In this document: piece by piece, positions 8,017 to 16,900 of the stretch
Position numbering within the stretch: position 1 is the first letter of the stretch
Layout of the letters: every line of letters begins with the position of its first letter
Assembly (NCBI RefSeq): GCF_000315625.1
Contig: NW_005434544.1
Span: forward strand, 136,244-184,398
From: Guillardia theta CCMP2712
Taxonomy: Eukaryota; Protista; Cryptophyta
Reading direction: 5' to 3'
DNA: 48,155 nucleotides
Notes under the pieces: model-generated
Database searches by the model: none
The model's input: only the letters and a program-made list of their open reading frames with translations
Told to the model about the DNA's origin: nothing
Program-made: the position numbers and the translations under genes

Positions 8017-10849
8017 CTAGGCATTGACGGCCTTGGCGGCTCTGATCAGCTCTTGCGCGTGCTCGAGCGCCTGCGGATGAGGTCAGGCGAGGAGCGAGAC
8101 TGAGCACCTGCCTTGAGGTCCCCGGGCAGATCGCGCTTGACCATCTTGACCAGCTCCGCTTCATGCGCCTCCAACTTCGACTGCAGCAGATCCGTGAGGG
8201 GAGAGGAGAGATGAGCAGAGGAGGAAGAGAACATAACATGCCTGGAGCTTAGACAACATGTCGAGCGATGATGCTGATGCCTTGCTGCCAAACCTGGCTT
8301 GCCATGTCAGATACATCGAAGGCAACAAGCAGGAGCGACCCGATGGTAGCCCATAAGTGCCGCAGCAAACCCTGAAAGCAAGTCACGCGAGCGACCCTCC
8401 TGCCGCCCTCACCTTGATGACGCTCTCCTTCTTCCTCACGTCCTCCCCGATGGGCTCAGCTCGTGACCCCCTCCCGCTCTTGCCTGCGGGGAGCGCATTG
8501 AGGTCGCTGAAGCCGGCAGGCGACGGAGCGACGGATCGGCGAGACTTAATCTTCCACTCCTCGACGGGGCTGGAGGAGGAGAGCTCTCCGTTCCCCCGCC
8601 TCTCCCTGCTGGCCCCGTTCTCCTTAGTACGCGAGCCCTTGGCTAAGATCTGCATCTTGTCCACCTTCAACTCTCGTCCCGTCGCCCCCTCCCTCGTGTA
8701 CATGTCGCTCTCTCGGAACGCTCCACCTAGCGACTCCTGCCAGCTTGCATGCGTCGAGCTGCCCGCACTGACCTGCGGCTCCTCCGCCCCATCCCGGGTG
8801 GCCTCCATGTCAGACTTCAAGGTCTCCACCACTGACGCCTGATGGCGATTCACTCGCTCTACCACCCGACTCGGATCGCTATTCTTGTCCGCTACGCTCC
8901 TCCCTGACCTCGCCTCCCACAGCAGCTTCTGCCTTTTTGTCACAGGGCCGCTCGCGAGCCCGGCCCCGCGCGGACCTCCGTAGAAGTCGCACAGAGGCAG
9001 GATGGCGGTTAGGTTGACGGACCTGTGCGCCTGCAGGATGCGGCATGAGTCTCAAGAGGAGAGAGGGAGAAGGATAAGGAGAGGAGGGATGGGATGGGAT
9101 GGGATGGGAGGGGAGAGATGTCACCTGACAAAGGGCTCTCTTCATCTTCTTCTGTTCATTCTGATTCGACAGGTTGTTCGCGTGCTCAAAGACCGGCTCA
9201 AAGATTTGCTGGTTCTTCGAATCCACCAGTCCCGTCTTGCCGTTCTCCAGATAATCGTAGAACCCAGTGAAGAAAGCCGTCCTCGATAGCTTCCCCGAAC
9301 CAACAAACTCCTCCTCCCTCGCCTTGAGGCTCGGGAAGTCGAGGTACAGCTTGTGGATCTGTCCCTCGTCCAGCGTCACCTTCACCTCCGTGTTGGTTCG
9401 AACCATGTCGGTCATGGTAGGGATCGCGGAGGGAACGGGAGGATCGATACGAGGAGGAGCACGACGGGAGGAGTCCAGTTTCTCCGTCCTCTGCCAGAAT
9501 TCTTCCTCGCTCATGATCCCGCTCTGCAGAGAAAATGATCACCCTGAACGAGAAGGAGAGGGAGAGAGTGAAGCACAGGGCGAGGAGGGAAAGTGAACAC
9601 GTGGAAGAGTGAGGTAAGGGAAAAGGATCTGGGTTCGACAGCTGTGCAAAGGGAAGGGAGGGAGGGAGGGAGGGAGGGAGGGAGGGAGGAGGTGGAGAAA
9701 CAGCAAGATCAGGTGCAGGGCAGGGTGGGGGTTGACGAGCAGCAGGGGAGAGGAGCAGGGAAGGACTTCACACCAGCACGAGCTCTTGTCGCAGTGCAAA
9801 CACGAAGTTATCCTTGCCGAGCTTCGCGATCGCCGCAGACGTCTTCTCCATCGCAAGCTTGTCGTTACCTTGTGTCGCCTGCCCCCCCCCGCCAGTTGTC
9901 GTAGCCGTCTTGGGCATGTGGGTGAGGATGGCGTTCTTCACGCTGTTCATTCTCCGCTCAGCATCTCCCTCAGCCTGAGCCCCCGTAAGAGAGCAAGACA
10001 AGGGGAGTGGCGGCTACTTGGGTGAAGTCAAAGATGACATCTTTCTTCGGTGGCCTGCAGCAGTCCGTCAGGTCGTGTTAGAGGTGGAAGAAGGAGGTAA
10101 ACAGACCTTCCTCGAACTTTGAGTAAGTACTTGCTCGTGCTTGCCATCGGCTTGAGCTGCATGTTCGTTAGCTACCTCCTGCTCCTTCGTCCTTCCCCTG
10201 CTCCTCCTCAAAATCGTTTCCTCCACACTACTTGCTTCCCACTCCTCCGCCTCCTCCCCAGCTCACCAAGTCTTCAGCTGGCCAGGTCACATTGAATTCA
10301 GAACTGTACCCGGGAGGAGTATCAGAACTTTGAAATGGCCAACAGCTCAGCAGACGTCACCTTGAGCAGGCAAAGGAGAAGCCTTGCTCGTTCACAGAGA
10401 TTGTTCCTTGTATCAATGGCCTGCAAACCACCCATGATCAGGCAAGCAGGATCGTTCTCCACTAGGTGATGTAGTGGTAGTTGCAAGGTTGATTGCAGTT
10501 GATGGTTGTGACGGTGATAGTGAAGGTGCGAGGAGGAGGTGGTTAAGGTAGTGATGGTGTAGTAAGTAGGTGGCGGTTGTAGTGGTTGTGGTGAAGGAGG
10601 AGGAGGGAGAGGAGATGAAGGTAGAGGAAGTAGTAGCAGAGGTAGGAGTAGTTGTGATAGTGGAGGAAGTGCAGGAGGTGGAGAGTAGATGGTGGTTGTG
10701 GAGTACGAGTAGGAGAAAGACAAGTACGAGTATGAGTATGAGGAAGGAGGAAGATACAGGAGGAGGAAGATGCAGGAGGAGATGCGGAGGAGGAGGAAGA
10801 TGCAGGAGGAGATACGGAGGAGGAGGAGGAGGAGGAGGAGGAGGAGGAG

Positions 10850-10884
<35 letters not shown>

Positions 10885-11014
10885 GGAGGAGGAGGAGGAG
10901 GAGGAAGGAGGAGGAGGAGGAGGAGGAGGAGGAGGAGGAGGAGGAGGAGGTTCCATGCTCTTACGCATCTTTCGGTCGTCCCTCCGCCCGCATCCATCCC
11001 TCTTCCGTCGCCAT
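8017..11014 (-). CDS. GTF2H1: TFIIH subunit 1 (p62/Tfb1)-like: PH-like N-terminus plus BSD-like domains
   Basis: Phase-compatible exons give MATEEGWMRAEGRPKDA-PLIQGTISVNEQGFSF..-LTNMQLKPMASTSKYLLKV (PH-like), then LRQELVL..IMSEEEFWQ and VTLDEGQIHKLYLDFPSLKAREEEFV..LSRTAFFTGFYDY (BSD-like). The sequence is divergent. The 3' end is ambiguous (8017 or 7994). Confidence 0.62.
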
Positions 11015-11178: not shown

Positions 11179-11780
11179 ATGTCCAAGATGCATGGGCTGG
11201 CGTGTTTGCTCCGGGGAGGAGCGACGATAGCGAGAAGCAGGTGAGATGAAGAGATGAAGAGATGGAGAGATGGAGAGATGGAGAGATGAAGAGATGGAGA
11301 GATGGAGAGATGGAGAGATGAAGAGATGGAGAGATGAAGAGATGAAGAGATGGAGAGATGGAGAGATGGAGAGATGGAGAGATGAAGAGATGGAGAGATG
11401 AAGAGATGAAGAGATGGAGAGATGGAGAGATGAAGAGATGAAGAGATGAAGAGATGAAGAGATGATGAGCAATGATGATGATGACGACGATGACGACGAC
11501 GACGACGACGATGATGTTTGTTGGTGTTGGTGTTGGTGTTGGTGTTGGTGTTGGCAGTCAAGACGATGACGATGCTGATGATGATGACGACGATAATGAT
11601 GACTTAACTTTGATGATGTTTTTTGTTGGTGTTGGTGTTGGCAGTCAAGACGATGGTCAGCATTGTAGTATTGGTGCGATCAGGATGAGGTCAGGGAGCA
11701 GGGTGATTGGGAAGGAAGCAAGTACGTGTGATCCATGATGGTAGTCAAGTTGGGGAACGAGGAGAGCAGGGAGCGCAAGA

Positions 11781-11845
<65 letters not shown>

Positions 11846-12876
11846 CCCAGCAAGATATTAGAGGAACTCTCCGGAGAGCTGACAAGTGATCTTGATTAAA
11901 GTCTTGCTTGTGTCAGCATCAACAAGTTACCCGGCACGTCGAGGTGCTTTAGGACCTCACAGACCAAATTAGGCATCTTCGACTCGTTGAAGGAGACATG
12001 GCAAGGAACCAAGGATCAGTATTCGGCCAAGAAGCAGCAAGAAATGTTTCATGCCATGGTATTGCGCGTGTGCCTCCCTTCCCACTTCCCTCACCCCTTC
12101 CTGCAGGTGGGGCAGCTGATCAAGAAAGAGAAGTTCGATCTTGATGACCTCCATGATATCTTCAAGTCAGATCTCCTCCTCCTCCTCCTCCTCGTCCTCC
12201 TCCTCCTCCTCCTCCTCCTCCTCCTCCTCCTCCTCCTCCTCCTCCTCCTCCATTGACGAGCTCTGCCCAGGCAAGGCGCCGAGCAGTCCGGCGTGAACAG
12301 CTGGAGGCAGCACCTGCCGGGAGTGAAGAACTCACCGGAGATGCTGCAGCTGTGAGTGTGTCCTCTGACCGCCGGGCGACGTGACTATCCTGCCAGTCAA
12401 GAGACCATGAGCGTGCTCGACGTTATCCCTCCCGAGTTCCGCCGCGAGCCCGACAGGCTGAAAGCTGAAGAGGTGCTGGGCTGAGCTTGTCAAGGCATCG
12501 AGCTGAGGCTGTTGAGCAGAAGGCGAGGCTGGCGAAGTCGACGGGGAAGTCAGTGATGGAAATCAACAAAGTGCTGAAAAGATTCGACGTGACCTCCCTG
12601 CTCCACTTGTTTTCCAGCTCGCTGACGTGTCAGGCAGGAGCTGAAGATGCTTCACGGCTGGCTGAGGAAGCGAGCTCTTTCTGGGAAGCCGCTGCCTACG
12701 GTAGCTGGGGAGGTGCTGGGAGCGCAGAATTCTTAACTTTGAGAGCAGAACAGCAGGGAGTTGGCGATGATGGCGATGGAACCTGTGAGTGTTGTCGTGC
12801 TGTTCGACTCAGAGCATGCAGTGATAGCAGCTTGCAGGGGAGCGGCTTCCAGATGAAGACGAAGTTCAAGAGGTGA
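11179..12876 (+). CDS. Small protein: mitochondrial-type presequence plus stand-alone SRP54/Ffh M-domain (mL105-like); 9 exons
   Basis: Spliced: MSKMHGLACLLRGGATIARSSINKLPGTSRCFRTSQTKLGIFDSLKETW...KFDLDDLHDIFKQ..HLPGVK..MSVLDVIPPEFRREPDRLKAEEKARLAKSTGKSVMEINKVLKRFDELKML...GSGFQMKTKFKR*. It aligns by eye with the Ffh M-domain pattern FxLxDF..MxPG..IIxSMTxxERxxPxxIxxSRxxRIAxGSGxxVxEVNxLLKQF. All introns are GT-AG and in phase. Confidence 0.75.
11242..11850. repeat. Compound microsatellite intron: (GAGATGGA/GAGATGAA)n, (GAT/GAC)n, (TGTTGG)n, (GCAGGA)n
   Basis: Directly visible, filling intron 1 (11241-11916) of the M-domain gene. Confidence 0.95.
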
Positions 12877-13142: not shown

Positions 13143-13905
13143 TCAAGAGGAGCTGAGAACTCTCGGGCTCCTAGTGACTTCCAACTTTCTTGCTGACTTA
13201 GGGGGACGAGGAGAGCTCTTCGACCTCTCTGACGGAGGAGTGGGAGGGGGCCGGGCTCCCCTCAAGCAGCTGATGGAGAGCAGGACGTTGAAGATGGTGT
13301 CTTTGTCGCTGCCTTCCCCTCCTATCAGCAAGTTCAACGAGCTATCTGCTGCTCGACTCAGGCTCAGAGCAGGGAGGTGGCGAGGAGAAGTTGTCTGCGA
13401 CAAGCTCCTTCCTTGTGTGCTTGCAAGCATGTGCTTCAGGTACAGGTCCCTCATCCCTTCCAACTTTGCAAGCGTCACATCCTCCGGCTCGTTCGTCCCC
13501 TTCGCCCCGATCGACTCTCTGATCCTGCTGCGCTTCATTCTCACCTCCTCCTCAGCAGCTGCAGCCATCTCCTCGTGACCCCCCGAGCTGTTCCAGTCGA
13601 AGACGCTGCAGAACTCCTTGAGTCCGATCAGGTTGCTAAGGCCGACCACGTAGAACAAGGTCGACCCCTGCAACTTCTTCATCCCGCACATCTGCAGCCC
13701 CGCGGCGAGAGCGAAGGGCGAGATCGCCTTGGCGTCGTCAGGCTTTAGCAGCATGAACGCCTGGGCCACGTTGCGGAAGAGGCAGCGGAGCACGAGTTTG
13801 ATCCTCTCTACCACCTGCGACTTGAACTCGTCCGAAGTTCGGCTCTGCTCCTTGAGGTACTTGTTGGCTTTCGGGCTTCTCGGCACCTTGCAGCTGAAAA
13901 CCGAC

Positions 13906-13940
<35 letters not shown>

Positions 13941-16900
13941 CGGGAGGTAGTTGGACAACCTAAGCGCTTCTCTGTATCTCTCAAGCTTCACGCTAATACG
14001 GTCCCCTCCTTCTTGCCGCCCGCTCGCGAAGGAGGCAGATCTGGAGGCGGCGGGTCGGACTGTGACGGTGTCGGGGGAGGAGCACAGGTCCTCCTTCCCC
14101 TCCTCGAGCGTGTCGACATGCGAGAGTAGCGCAGCTGAGCTCGACCACCTGGTGAAGCTTGCGGAGGTCTTGAAGGAGAGCGACTTGCCGAGCTTGCCCG
14201 GCGAGCCGTTCTTCCCCTCCTTCTGTCGTTGGATGTCGGCGACGCTCCACCTCCGGTCTCGAGGCCTGGCGTCGCCTCTGCTGCTCCCTGCGCATGGCAT
14301 CAGGTCCAGCTGGCCTCCAGCTCGACTCACCCACGGACGACTCGAGGCCCGGAAAGATGGGCTTGGTGCTGACTGAGAGAGCGTGAGAGAGCGACAAGGA
14401 CGAGAGGGAGGGGTCATGCATGCGTGAGGGAGGGGTCAGGCATGCGTGAGGGAGGGGTCATGCATGCGTGAGGGAGGGGTCAGGCATGCGTGAGGGAGGG
14501 GTCAGGCATGCGTGAGGGAGGGGTCATGCATGCGTGAGGGAGGGGTCATGCATGCGTGAGGGAGGGGTCAGGCATGCGTGAGGGAGGGGTCATGCATGCG
14601 TGAGGGAGAGCATGGTGGAGGGAGGGGTCAGGCATGCGTGAGGGAGGGGTCAAGCATGGAGAAGGGAGGGGTCACCTATCCTGAGGGTAGGAGAGGTCTC
14701 GCGGTTCGAGGTGGTCTCATCGGAGCCGGAGGCTTGCTTCTTGGATTCTTCGAGAGCGAAGTACTTGGGCATGGCGCTGTCAGCGACGTACTTGGCGACC
14801 TTCTCAGCTTGCTTGAAGCTCAGCATGGCGTGGAATTCCAAGAAGCTGTCGTAGCTGATGGACGCAACCTCGCAGTCGTAGTGCGCCTTGATGGTGGCCG
14901 TGCGGGTGGAGCAGAACTGGTCGATCAGCCCGAGCTCTCCGATCTCCTGACCCCTCGAGATGTAGGCGGCGACGTTGTTGTTGATGACTATGAGAGCGAT
15001 GCCGCTGAGCAGGATGAAGAGATTGTCCGCCGACTCCCCCTGCCGGCACAGGATCTCCCCCTGCTTCAGCCTCTGGTACGTCGAGATGGCTGCAAGGCTC
15101 CTGATCTCCGACATGGTGAACAGCCCCAGGATCCCCTTCCTCCTGCTCATGAACTCCAGGTAGCAGATCTCGATGCTCTTCGCCGCGTTCCCGTACTGCG
15201 ACCAGTTCTCCCTCCCGATGGCGTCAGAGTGCGCCAGGTACGACCGCAAACCGCTCTCAAACTTTGCCCCCAGCAGCCTCACGTAGTCCGCAAACTTCTG
15301 GTACTGGAAGAGCAGCACAAACGTCACGACCTCAGCTCGGAACGAGGCCCCTCGCAGCTGCTCCATGCCCGGTGTCATCAGCCCCAGGTCACCGAAAGCC
15401 TGCCAAGCCTCTCATGCTCGGAACCCTCCTCCTCCCTCTGCTAGCTCCCATCTCCCCCGCAAACTCGAGCTGGTTCTCACCTGGCCTCTGCTGAGGTTGG
15501 AGACTTCTCTGCGGTTGTAGAGGACCTTGATGCATCCTGACGGGCAGTCAGCGTGAGAGAGGAGGAGGAGCAGCCGACCTGTCAACACGAACCCAAACTC
15601 ATCCCCCTCGCTGTTCTGCTCCCAGATGAACTGCTCGCGGTCGAAGCCTTGCAGCACGCAAATCTCCATTAGGCGGATCACGTCCCACGCCGACAGGTTG
15701 GCATGGTCCAGGATCTTGAGCAGCCCCGTCCCGTGCTGTATTTGATCCACCAGGTACTTGAAGATGGCCACCTTGGCTGCGGGAAGGAACTGAGAGCTGT
15801 CGGGGACGTCGAGGCTAGCAAGGAAGTCAAGGGTCAAACTTTTCTCAGCTCGAGAGGCACCTGCGAGGCAACTTCATGACGAGCTCGAGCTCGTTCAGGG
15901 GGTTCGATGCTTCTGACATCATCTCCTGCAGGTCCTCAGGAGTCTTGTCGTTGTCGTACACCTCAAGCAGCGACTTCTCGATGATTTCTCGCCGCTCAGC
16001 TATCGGCATCTCGTTGCTCTTGGAAACGGTTCGGCCGAGATTCTCCAGCGGCTCCTCCTGCTCGTTCAACGCTGCTGGCTGGTCGAAGACGGAGAAGTTC
16101 TGGTCCCCCAGCTTCTCGTAGGCCACATGCTGTAGCAGACTCCAGAAGTCGAGGTCCTGCAGAGCGGTCATGCAAGCGCAGGCGATCTCCTCCCCCACCT
16201 GGTGGCTCATGTTCTCGCAGGCATCCTCCAGCTCGATCAGGACGACGTGCATGTACTCCATCTTCTTGGACTGCTGCTGGAGCCGTGCCTTCCGCAGCTG
16301 AACGAACCTGAAGCTCTGCCGGATGAGCCTGAAGGTCAAGTCCAACGTCTCCTGCTGCGACTCGATGGATGACATGAGTCGGCTGGACGATCCAGTCAGA
16401 GCCAGAACAAGCTCATAGCATAACAAGCTCATAGCATAACAAGCTCATAGCATAACAAGCTCATAGCATAACAAGCTCATAGCATAACAAGCTCATGGCA
16501 TAACAAGCTCATAGCATAACAAGCTCATAGCATAACAAGCTCATAGCATAACAAGCTCATAGCATAACAAGCTCATAGCATAACAAGCTCATAGCATAAC
16601 AAGCTCATAGCATAACAAGCTCATAGCATAACAAGCTCATAGCATAACAAGCTCATGGCATAACAAGCTCATAGCATAACAAGCTCATAGCATAACAAGC
16701 TCATAGCATAACAAGCTCATAGCATAACAAGCTCATAGCATAACAAGCTCATAGCATAACAAGCTCATAGCATAACAAGCTCATAGCATAACAAGCTCAT
16801 AGCATAACAAGCTCATAGCATAACAAGCTCATAGCATAACAAGCTCATAGCATAACAAGCTCATAGCATAACAAGCTCATAGCATAACAAGCTCATAGCA

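What the first reader, a model, noticed from the sequence alone, without database searches (positions are those of the whole stretch)
11179..12876. Mitochondrion-targeted stand-alone Ffh/SRP54 M-domain protein (SRP relic, mL105-like)
The gene is invisible in the ORF track because it is split into 9 small exons. The product of roughly 200 aa starts with an acid-free, R/S/L-rich presequence with an RCFRTS processing-like site. GIFDSLK follows, reminiscent of the Ffh N-terminus MFDxL, and then an M-domain with no NG GTPase. The SRP-RNA-binding residues are altered (SM to VI, GSG to STG), suggesting loss of SRP RNA. Established background: the ciliate mitoribosome contains an M-domain homologue (mL105), and a few protists retain full mitochondrial Ffh/FtsY. 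This could be a GTPase-less, ribosome-bound co-translational targeting module in this lineage.
Basis: partly seen in the sequence, partly recalled or inferred. Interest (0 to 1): 0.78.

Follow-up and report, generated by a model that had tools for sequence, protein, structure and literature searches.

The report
Guillardia mL105/MAP67 mitoribosome protein gene
This is a real nine-exon gene of the alga Guillardia theta for a small, probably mitochondrial protein descended from the signal-peptide-binding part of the bacterial targeting factor Ffh, but this exact protein was already listed in 2021 as a member of the widespread MAP67/mL105 family, so the finding is correct and not new.

Summary
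Window 11179-12876 (+) carries a 9-exon gene with GT-AG at all 8 introns. Its spliced product is identical to the public Guillardia theta protein GUITHDRAFT_166050 / XP_005822226.1 (208 aa).

The protein matches Pfam SRP_SPB above the curated cut-off (E 4e-9). It has no NG GTPase domain, and its first 42 residues are basic and free of acidic residues.

Its nearest solved structures are the mitoribosomal protein mL105 of Toxoplasma (Z 14.1) and Tetrahymena (Z 11.7). Ffh/SRP54 M domains follow (Z 9-12).

The genome shows no mitochondrial Ffh or FtsY. It has only a cytosolic pair and a single bacterial-type pair, whose FtsY carries a plastid-type leader.

Pyrih et al. 2021 (PMC8321541, Table S7) list this very sequence in the MAP67 family, predicted mitochondrial, and equate MAP67 with mL105. 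The family is near pan-eukaryotic, not lineage-specific.

Two points are not supported or not tested:
- The suggested likeness of GIFDSLK to the Ffh N-terminus found no support.

Localisation and ribosome binding in Guillardia remain inferred.

The parts
11179..12876 (+). Whole coding span of the MAP67/mL105 gene (GUITHDRAFT_166050), ATG to TGA, 9 exons
   Evidence: The spliced translation equals P0001, 208 aa. It is the only match to P0001 found in the genome scan.
11179..11240 (+). Exon 1, residues 1-21 (the last codon is split). It holds the start of the presequence-like leader MSKMHGLACLLRGGATIARS.
   Evidence: ATG with an in-frame stop 27 nt upstream, and donor cag|GTGAGA. Exon 2 has an in-frame stop just upstream and no Met of its own, so an upstream exon is needed. 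Only weak comparative support (AR..SS in Hanusia). No RNA check.
11241..11916 (+). Intron 1, 676 nt, made largely of microsatellites
   Evidence: TRF finds (GAGATGAA)x28 at 11243-11469, (GACGACGAC)x3, (TGTTGG)x6 and (GAGCAG)x11 at 11781-11845. GT..AG ends.
11917..12058 (+). Exon 2, residues 21-68. It holds the rest of the leader (RCFRTS, residues 30-35), the conserved GIFDSLK (residues 40-46, nt 11972-11992) and the pre-M helix.
   Evidence: Residues 38-68 are nearly invariant against Hanusia phi.
12107..12165 (+). Exon 3, residues 69-88. It holds the end of the linker-like helix and the start of the M domain (FDLDDL, from residue 77 = nt 12131).
   Evidence: Pfam SRP_SPB starts at residue 77. 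TIGR00959 aligns from residue 65 to profile position 315. A Tara relative reads through junctions E2/E3 and E3/E4 in one exon.
12271..12351 (+). Exon 4, residues 88-115, the finger-loop region (QGAEQSGVNSWRQHLPGVKNSPEML)
   Evidence: Aligned to the Ffh finger loop 'MKNMGGMASLMGKLPGM'. Low pLDDT at residues 96-106 in the model.
12397..12472 (+). Exon 5, residues 115-140. V124-I125 (nt 12422-12427) stand in place of the Ffh 'SM'.
   Evidence: HMMER alignment to E. coli Ffh.
12520..12588 (+). Exon 6, residues 141-163 (KARLAKSTGKSVMEINKVLKRFD). This is the counterpart of the Ffh SRP-RNA-binding helix-turn-helix. S147-T148-G149 (nt 12538-12546) stand in place of GSG.
   Evidence: The exon alone hits SRP_SPB positions 63-84 at E 0.044. 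Alignments.
12638..12700 (+). Exon 7, residues 164-184. It holds the last M-domain helix (ELKMLHGWLRKR) and the conserved GKPLP.
   Evidence: Pfam match ends at residue 166. Model helix 152-177. Conserved in P0002 and P0003.
12749..12784 (+). Exon 8, residues 185-196, the C-terminal short helix (NSRELAMMAMEP)
   Evidence: Structural alignments to the mL105 chains run to residue 208.
12838..12876 (+). Exon 9, residues 197-208 (GSGFQMKTKFKR) plus TGA. This is the basic C-terminal tail.
   Evidence: Hanusia P0002 and the Tara relative P0003 end at the same position.

Best explanation
The gene encodes the Guillardia theta orthologue of MAP67 / mitoribosomal protein mL105. This is a nucleus-encoded, NG-less descendant of the M domain of the mitochondrial ancestor's Ffh.

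Inferred mechanism, taken from orthologues rather than shown in Guillardia:
- The basic, acid-free leader takes the protein into the mitochondrial matrix.
- There the M-domain fold sits at the polypeptide exit of the mitoribosomal large subunit, where bacterial Ffh would dock.
- The C-terminal tail reaches into the tunnel and meets the nascent chain.
- The protein helps couple the translating mitoribosome to the inner-membrane insertase (Oxa1), without GTPase cycling, SRP RNA or an FtsY receptor.

Guillardia shows no mtFfh or mtFtsY, so this would be the only remnant of the mitochondrial SRP system in this alga.
For: Identity.
- The spliced product equals XP_005822226.1 / GUITHDRAFT_166050.
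- This sequence is printed in Table S7 of Pyrih et al. 2021 as the G. theta MAP67, 'M (3)'.
- The same paper states that Tetrahymena mL105 is a MAP67 orthologue. It cites mitochondrial proteomics for the T. gondii, Arabidopsis and Chlamydomonas members.

Family.
- Pfam SRP_SPB: E 4.1e-9, 37.2 bits against a cut-off of 27, residues 77-166.
- TIGR00959 ffh profile positions 315-423 only, with no NG.
- PDB phmmer: E. coli Ffh M domain at 4e-7, and Tetrahymena mL105 6z1p_AT at 2.6e-5 over residues 30-192.

Structure.
- The AF2 model has core pLDDT of 72-91.
- Best Foldseek and VIA matches: 9i05_AI, Z 14.1, 150 residues aligned, which is T. gondii mL105 TGGT1_254230; 9g6k_Le, Z 12.6; 6z1p_AT, Z 11.7.
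- Also the Polytomella chain 8apn_Ub (Z 9.8) and the Chlamydomonas chain 7pkt_S (Z 8.6).
- Ffh/SRP54 M domains score Z 9-12 over residues 77-175.
- Unrelated chains score Z 3.4 or less.

Mechanism in orthologues.
- mL105 sits at the tunnel exit with its C-terminal helix in the tunnel (PMC7326499).
- It contacts an Oxa1-like density in Polytomella (PMC9576764).

Leader. No acidic residue before position 43, 7 basic residues, and no signal-peptide-length hydrophobic core.

Genome.
- Only four SRP-GTPase loci were found. C4 is eukaryotic SRP54 and C76 is SR-alpha.
- C29 is a bacterial-type Ffh. C31 is a bacterial-type FtsY whose open frame shows a signal-peptide-like hydrophobic stretch followed by F, read by eye as a plastid-type leader.

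Gene model. The Hanusia phi protein is colinear at 78% identity. A Tara Oceans relative with different intron positions reads straight through seven of the eight junctions.
Against: - Nothing shows localisation or ribosome association in Guillardia itself.
- No RNA evidence was obtainable for the exon 1 to exon 2 splice that supplies the start codon and half of the leader.
- No targeting predictor could be run here. The published 'M (3)' is a prediction, and its footnote was not read.
- The structure model is only moderate (mean pLDDT 65.7). It was built from a four-row alignment that includes an Ffh fragment, which biases it toward the M-domain fold.
- The own-genome scans give lower bounds, so a highly divergent mtFfh or mtFtsY could have been missed.
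- The N-terminus of the C29 Ffh-type gene was not resolved.
Confidence: 0.87

Rival explanations
1. It is a MAP67-family protein, but in Guillardia it acts as a free matrix factor or chaperone. It would bind hydrophobic N-terminal segments of mitochondrially made proteins, rather than being a stable mitoribosomal subunit.
For: Pyrih et al. proposed only signal-peptide-like binding and membrane targeting, without requiring ribosome residence. The ribosome-contacting partners (extensions of bL24m and uL29m, rRNA H7) differ between the lineages already solved. Binding is therefore not guaranteed in a cryptophyte.
Against: Every orthologue seen structurally so far (Tetrahymena, Polytomella/Chlamydomonas, Toxoplasma) is ribosome-bound at the same site. 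The model aligns to those chains through to its C-terminal tail.
Confidence: 0.08
2. The first exon is mis-modelled. The true N-terminus differs, for example a bipartite plastid or periplastid leader or none at all, so the protein is not mitochondrial in this alga.
For: The exon 1 to exon 2 junction spans a 676-nt repeat-filled intron and has no RNA support here. Similarity to Hanusia upstream of the junction is only a few residues. Cryptophytes send many proteins to the plastid complex.
Against: Exon 2 needs an upstream ATG exon, because it has an in-frame stop at 11897-11899 and no Met. Exon 1 has ATG, the correct phase and a consensus donor. The Hanusia protein has an equally basic, acid-free leader with no acidic residue before position 29. 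The part of the leader encoded in exon 2 is itself basic and acid-free. Family members elsewhere are mitochondrial by proteomics.
Confidence: 0.04
3. It is a chance or decaying M-domain-like ORF (a pseudogene) without function.
For: None beyond the divergence of the SRP-RNA-binding motifs.
Against: The frame is intact across nine exons with canonical splice sites. Identity to Hanusia phi is 78%, with the core nearly invariant. A more distant marine relative is conserved to the same C-terminus. The Pfam score is above the curated cut-off.
Confidence: 0.01

Closest known systems
MAP67 family / mitoribosomal protein mL105 (Chlamydomonas MAP67, Arabidopsis AT3G04950, T. gondii TGGT1_254230, Tetrahymena TTHERM_000931898; PDB 6Z1P chain AT, 9I05 chain AI)
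   Same: The architecture is the same: a mitochondrial-type leader, a pre-M helix, an Ffh-like M domain and a short basic C-terminal tail, with no NG domain. These are the best sequence and structure matches among mitoribosomal proteins. This exact protein is listed as the family's Guillardia member.
   Different: It is shorter (208 aa) than the ciliate (299 aa chain record) and apicomplexan members. It lacks the SecA-like C-terminal additions of Chloroplastida and Centrohelida described. Nothing was found that sets it apart from the family.
Bacterial Ffh / plastid cpSRP54 (M domain)
   Same: Homologous M-domain fold: helices M1-M5 with a finger loop. Pfam SRP_SPB and TIGR00959 positions 315-423. 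Z 9-12 to solved M domains.
   Different: No N or G domains. The SRP-RNA-contacting motifs are changed (SM to VI, GSG to STG, SRKRR to EEKAR). It has only 4 Met in residues 77-176. It scores far below the ffh equivalog cut-off (33 against 473 bits).
Mitochondrial Ffh (mtFfh) with mtFtsY of Goniomonas, Heterolobosea, Alveida, Hemimastigophora
   Same: Same presumed ancestry, the Ffh of the mitochondrial endosymbiont, and the same compartment. The cryptist Goniomonas has both mtFfh and MAP67.
   Different: mtFfh keeps the NG GTPase and works with a receptor. Guillardia shows no such pair, and this protein is the NG-less paralogue.
Mammalian mL45 (functional analogue)
   Same: It occupies the equivalent site at the tunnel exit and mediates membrane contact, according to the Polytomella structure paper.
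   Different: It is unrelated in sequence and fold, and is analogous only. This statement comes from the paper and was not tested here.

Membership tests
MAP67 / mL105 | Homology to the Ffh/SRP54 M domain along most of the mature protein | tested here: met
   Pfam SRP_SPB at E 4.1e-9, above the cut-off, residues 77-166. TIGR00959 covers residues 65-166. PDB Ffh M domains score 4e-7.
MAP67 / mL105 | Absence of the N and G (GTPase) domains | tested here: met
   The protein is 208 aa and has no PF00448 hit. The ffh profile is matched only at positions 315-423 of 428.
MAP67 / mL105 | Closer to solved mL105 chains than to SRP proteins over the full length, including the pre-M helix and the C-terminal tail | tested here: met
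   T. gondii mL105 9i05_AI: Z 14.1, 150 residues aligned, model residues 55-208. 9g6k_Le: Z 12.6, residues 40-208. Tetrahymena 6z1p_AT: Z 11.7, residues 64-208. Ffh crystal M domains cover residues 77-175. phmmer against 6z1p_AT gives E 2.6e-5 over residues 30-192. The Z margin over the best M domain (11.9) is modest, and the model is of moderate confidence.
MAP67 / mL105 | N-terminal mitochondrial presequence | tested here: inconclusive
   The composition fits: no D or E in residues 1-42, 7 basic residues, and no signal-peptide-length hydrophobic core. No predictor was available here. The published prediction is 'M (3)'. Exon 1 is not RNA-verified.
MAP67 / mL105 | Physical presence at the mitoribosome tunnel exit | not testable with these tools
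   Shown only for orthologues in Tetrahymena, Polytomella/Chlamydomonas and Toxoplasma.
MAP67 / mL105 | Listed by the family's authors | tested here: met
   Table S7 of PMC8321541 prints this sequence under Guillardia theta XP_005822226.1. It is identical to P0001.
Ffh / SRP54 (functional SRP protein) | NG GTPase domain that pairs with FtsY/SR | tested here: not met
   No PF00448 or N domain in the protein.
Ffh / SRP54 (functional SRP protein) | Conserved SRP-RNA-binding motifs of the M domain (SM..., RRxAxGSG) | tested here: not met
   V124-I125 stand in place of SM. S147-T148-G149 stand in place of GSG. E139-E140-K141-A142-R143 stand in place of SRKRR, in the alignment to E. coli Ffh. That these motifs contact the RNA comes from established knowledge of the Ffh-4.5S RNA structures (1DUL/1HQ1).

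The most novel reading that the evidence does not exclude
The conserved segment before the M domain (residues 38-76, KLGIFDSLKE...LIKKEK) may be the remnant of the last G-domain motif (ILGMGD) plus the GM linker of Ffh. MAP67 would then have arisen by simple 5' truncation of an mtFfh copy and gain of a presequence. MAFFT places LGIFD over LGMGD of a bacterial Ffh fragment. BLASTP aligns the region differently, and no profile search reaches it. Guillardia (MAP67 only) against its relative Goniomonas (MAP67 plus mtFfh/mtFtsY) would also be a natural pair for asking what the full mitochondrial SRP adds.
Probability: 0.2. Interest if true: 0.2.

Novelty: already known. Interest (0 to 1): 0.12.

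Why it matters
It matters little as a discovery. The gene, its family, its predicted location and its link to mL105 were published in 2021, and structures of orthologues on mitoribosomes exist from three lineages.

Its value is as a check.

Biologically, the family bears on how mitochondria insert their own membrane proteins co-translationally without a full SRP. Cryptists are a useful contrast. Goniomonas keeps mtFfh, mtFtsY and MAP67, while Guillardia appears to keep MAP67 only.

Tried and rejected

2. Exon-by-exon Pfam scan by reference. Only exon 6 gave a weak SRP_SPB signal (E 0.044), and the other exons are too short. The six-frame scan of the genome with PF02978 did not pick up this locus at all.

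3. Joined model. I did not send the joined spliced model as typed letters to any search tool. The joined frame was built only inside a script from window.fa, to test its identity with the public record. All later searches used that public record by its id, P0001, which had been found with a stop-free window ORF (12487-12873) that holds exon 6.

4. GIFDSLK as a likeness of the Ffh N-terminus. Residues 30-80 and 30-118 alone hit nothing relevant in the PDB. The best hit was a light-harvesting protein at E 0.1, taken as chance. Residues 36-110 hit no NCBIfam model. Rejected as unsupported.

5. First structure model, from a two-row alignment. Its pLDDT was 51.9, too poor to rely on. It was replaced by the second model.

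6. Word searches for relatives. They found only Hanusia phi, two fragments from marine metagenomes and one bacterial Ffh fragment.

7. The large representative search was not run. The protein was no longer open and the operators had flagged its cost. As a result, no family-wide alignment, tree or profile-profile test was made.

8. The N-terminus of the bacterial-type Ffh gene on contig C29 was not resolved.

Full report
WHAT IS THERE

The window is eukaryotic DNA with short introns and many microsatellites. An exon-level protein search identified the organism as Guillardia theta CCMP2712, in line with earlier notes of this scan.

No single ORF covers them.

Nine exons are joined at eight GT-AG introns: 11179-11240, 11917-12058, 12107-12165, 12271-12351, 12397-12472, 12520-12588, 12638-12700, 12749-12784 and 12838-12876. 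Together they give a 627-nt frame. Its translation is identical, residue for residue, to the public 208-aa protein GUITHDRAFT_166050, P0001.

Seven introns are 45-105 nt long. Intron 1 is 676 nt and consists mostly of tandem repeats. The protein matches only this locus in the genome.

HOW THE SEARCHES WERE DONE

There only exon 6 gave a weak SRP_SPB signal, at E 0.044.

I did not send the joined model as typed letters to any search tool. It was built only inside a script from the window file, to test identity with the public record. From then on the public record was used by its id.

SUPPORT FOR THE GENE MODEL

Comparative evidence stands in for them.
- The Hanusia phi protein P0002 is 78% identical and colinear without gaps from residue 21 to the same C-terminus.
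- Tara Oceans metagenome contigs carry a more distant relative whose introns lie elsewhere. One of its exons reads straight through the Guillardia junctions E2/E3 and E3/E4. A second open frame, P0003, reads through E4/E5 to E8/E9 and ends at the same C-terminus.

Seven of the eight junctions are therefore confirmed at the protein level. The first junction is not. Three things support it:
- Exon 2 needs an upstream ATG exon, because it has an in-frame stop at 11897-11899 and no Met.
- Exon 1 has the correct phase and a consensus donor.
- A few residues are shared with Hanusia.

WHAT THE PROTEIN IS

Sequence evidence:
- Pfam SRP_SPB matches residues 77-166 at E 4.1e-9 and 37.2 bits, against a cut-off of 27.
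- The full-length bacterial Ffh model TIGR00959 is matched only at profile positions 315-423 of 428. That is the end of the GM linker plus the M domain, aligned to residues 65-166.
- There is no N or G domain.
- Against the PDB, the best sequence hits are E. coli and Bacillus Ffh M domains (4e-7 to 2e-6). The Tetrahymena mitoribosomal chain 6z1p_AT scores E 2.6e-5 over residues 30-192.

Structure evidence:
- A first structure model was too poor to use.
- A second, from a four-row alignment, has pLDDT of 72-91 in the core.
- Its best structural matches are 9i05_AI (Z 14.1, rmsd 3.6, 150 residues aligned), 9g6k_Le (Z 12.6) and 6z1p_AT (Z 11.7).
- The Polytomella (8apn_Ub, Z 9.8) and Chlamydomonas (7pkt_S, Z 8.6) mitoribosome chains also match.
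- Ffh/SRP54 M domains score Z 9-12 over residues 77-175.
- Unrelated chains score Z 3.4 or less.
- Chain AI of the Toxoplasma mitoribosome is mL105, TGGT1_254230.

- The leader has no acidic residue before position 43 and 7 basic residues in the first 42. It has no hydrophobic core of signal-peptide length.
- RCFRTS is residues 30-35 and GIFDSLK is residues 40-46.
- In the alignment to E. coli Ffh, SM is replaced by VI, GSG by STG and SRKRR by EEKAR. These are the motifs that contact SRP RNA, by established knowledge of the Ffh-4.5S RNA structures. Their loss fits the loss of an RNA partner.
- The suggested likeness of GIFDSLK to the Ffh N-terminus (MFDxL) found no support. The N-terminal segment alone hits nothing relevant.
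- MAFFT places LGIFD over the LGMGD motif at the end of the G domain of a bacterial Ffh fragment. BLASTP aligns the region differently. That alternative is only a lead.

IS THERE A FULL MITOCHONDRIAL SRP IN THIS GENOME?

Six-frame scans with PF02978, PF00448, TIGR00959 and TIGR00064 find four SRP-GTPase loci.
- C4 reads as eukaryotic SRP54 and C76 as SR-alpha.
- C29 is a bacterial-type Ffh.
- C31 is a bacterial-type FtsY. Its open frame shows a signal-peptide-like stretch followed by F (read by eye), the cryptophyte pattern for plastid import.

So there is one cytosolic pair and one plastid pair, and no third pair. These scans give lower bounds, and the N-terminus of the C29 gene was not resolved.

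WHAT IS KNOWN

Pyrih et al. 2021 (PMC8321541) describe the MAP67 family.
- Its members are NG-less Ffh M-domain proteins, predicted or shown to be mitochondrial.
- The family is present in most eukaryotic lineages except Metazoa, Fungi, Discoba and Metamonada, and was probably in LECA.
- It is found alongside mtFfh and mtFtsY in Goniomonas.
- The authors state that Tetrahymena mL105 is a MAP67 orthologue.
- Their Table S7 prints this exact Guillardia sequence with 'M (3)'.

Cryo-EM places mL105 at the tunnel exit with its C-terminal helix in the tunnel (PMC7326499). In Polytomella it contacts an Oxa1-like density and overlaps the site of mammalian mL45 (PMC9576764). It is also part of the Toxoplasma mitoribosome. 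A 2026 preprint takes the distribution of mL105 from earlier work.

VERDICT

The mechanism I favour is import by the basic leader, docking at the mitoribosomal exit in place of Ffh, and RNA- and GTPase-free coupling of the nascent chain to the insertase. It is inferred from orthologues. Localisation, ribosome binding and the first splice remain untested in Guillardia.

Noticed in passing
window 11241-11916 and 12173-12251: Intron 1 is almost wholly microsatellite: (GAGATGAA)x28, (GACGACGAC)x3, (TGTTGG)x6 and (GAGCAG)x11. Intron 3 carries (CTC)x26. The other six introns are 45-53 nt and free of repeats.
   Followed up: partly
window 10758-10950: A run of (AGG)x63 lies about 230 nt upstream of the start codon. 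It gives long spurious ORFs on both strands.
   Followed up: no
window 12487-12876: One frame stays open for 129 codons through exon 6, introns 6-8 and exon 9 (the three introns sum to 150 nt). Retention of all three introns would therefore still give an open frame ending at the same stop. Possibly chance.
   Followed up: no
window 14653-15378 (-): A neighbouring minus-strand open frame carries a cyclic-nucleotide-binding domain (PF00027, E 4e-14). The 424-aa minus-strand ORF at 13146-14417 and the ORF at 8882-9514 have no Pfam match.
   Followed up: partly
G000 contigs C4:528396-530353, C76:326650-327250, C29:677386-681714, C31:610757-611744 (loci L001-L029): This is the SRP GTPase inventory of Guillardia theta: eukaryotic SRP54, SR-alpha, a bacterial-type Ffh and a bacterial-type FtsY. 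The FtsY open frame begins with a signal-peptide-like stretch followed by F (read by eye), the cryptophyte plastid-import pattern.
   Followed up: partly
L030 (Tara Oceans contig, 1034 nt), 148-291 and 353-697: A marine environmental relative of the gene is 38-49% identical in the aligned pieces. Its introns lie at positions other than those in Guillardia, one inside the equivalent of exon 4. The gene caller split it into two products.
   Followed up: partly
P0001 residues 35-72: There is a weak likeness of TKLGIFDSLK... to the N-terminus of a dinoflagellate light-harvesting protein (8jw0_T, E 0.1). Taken as chance.
   Followed up: no
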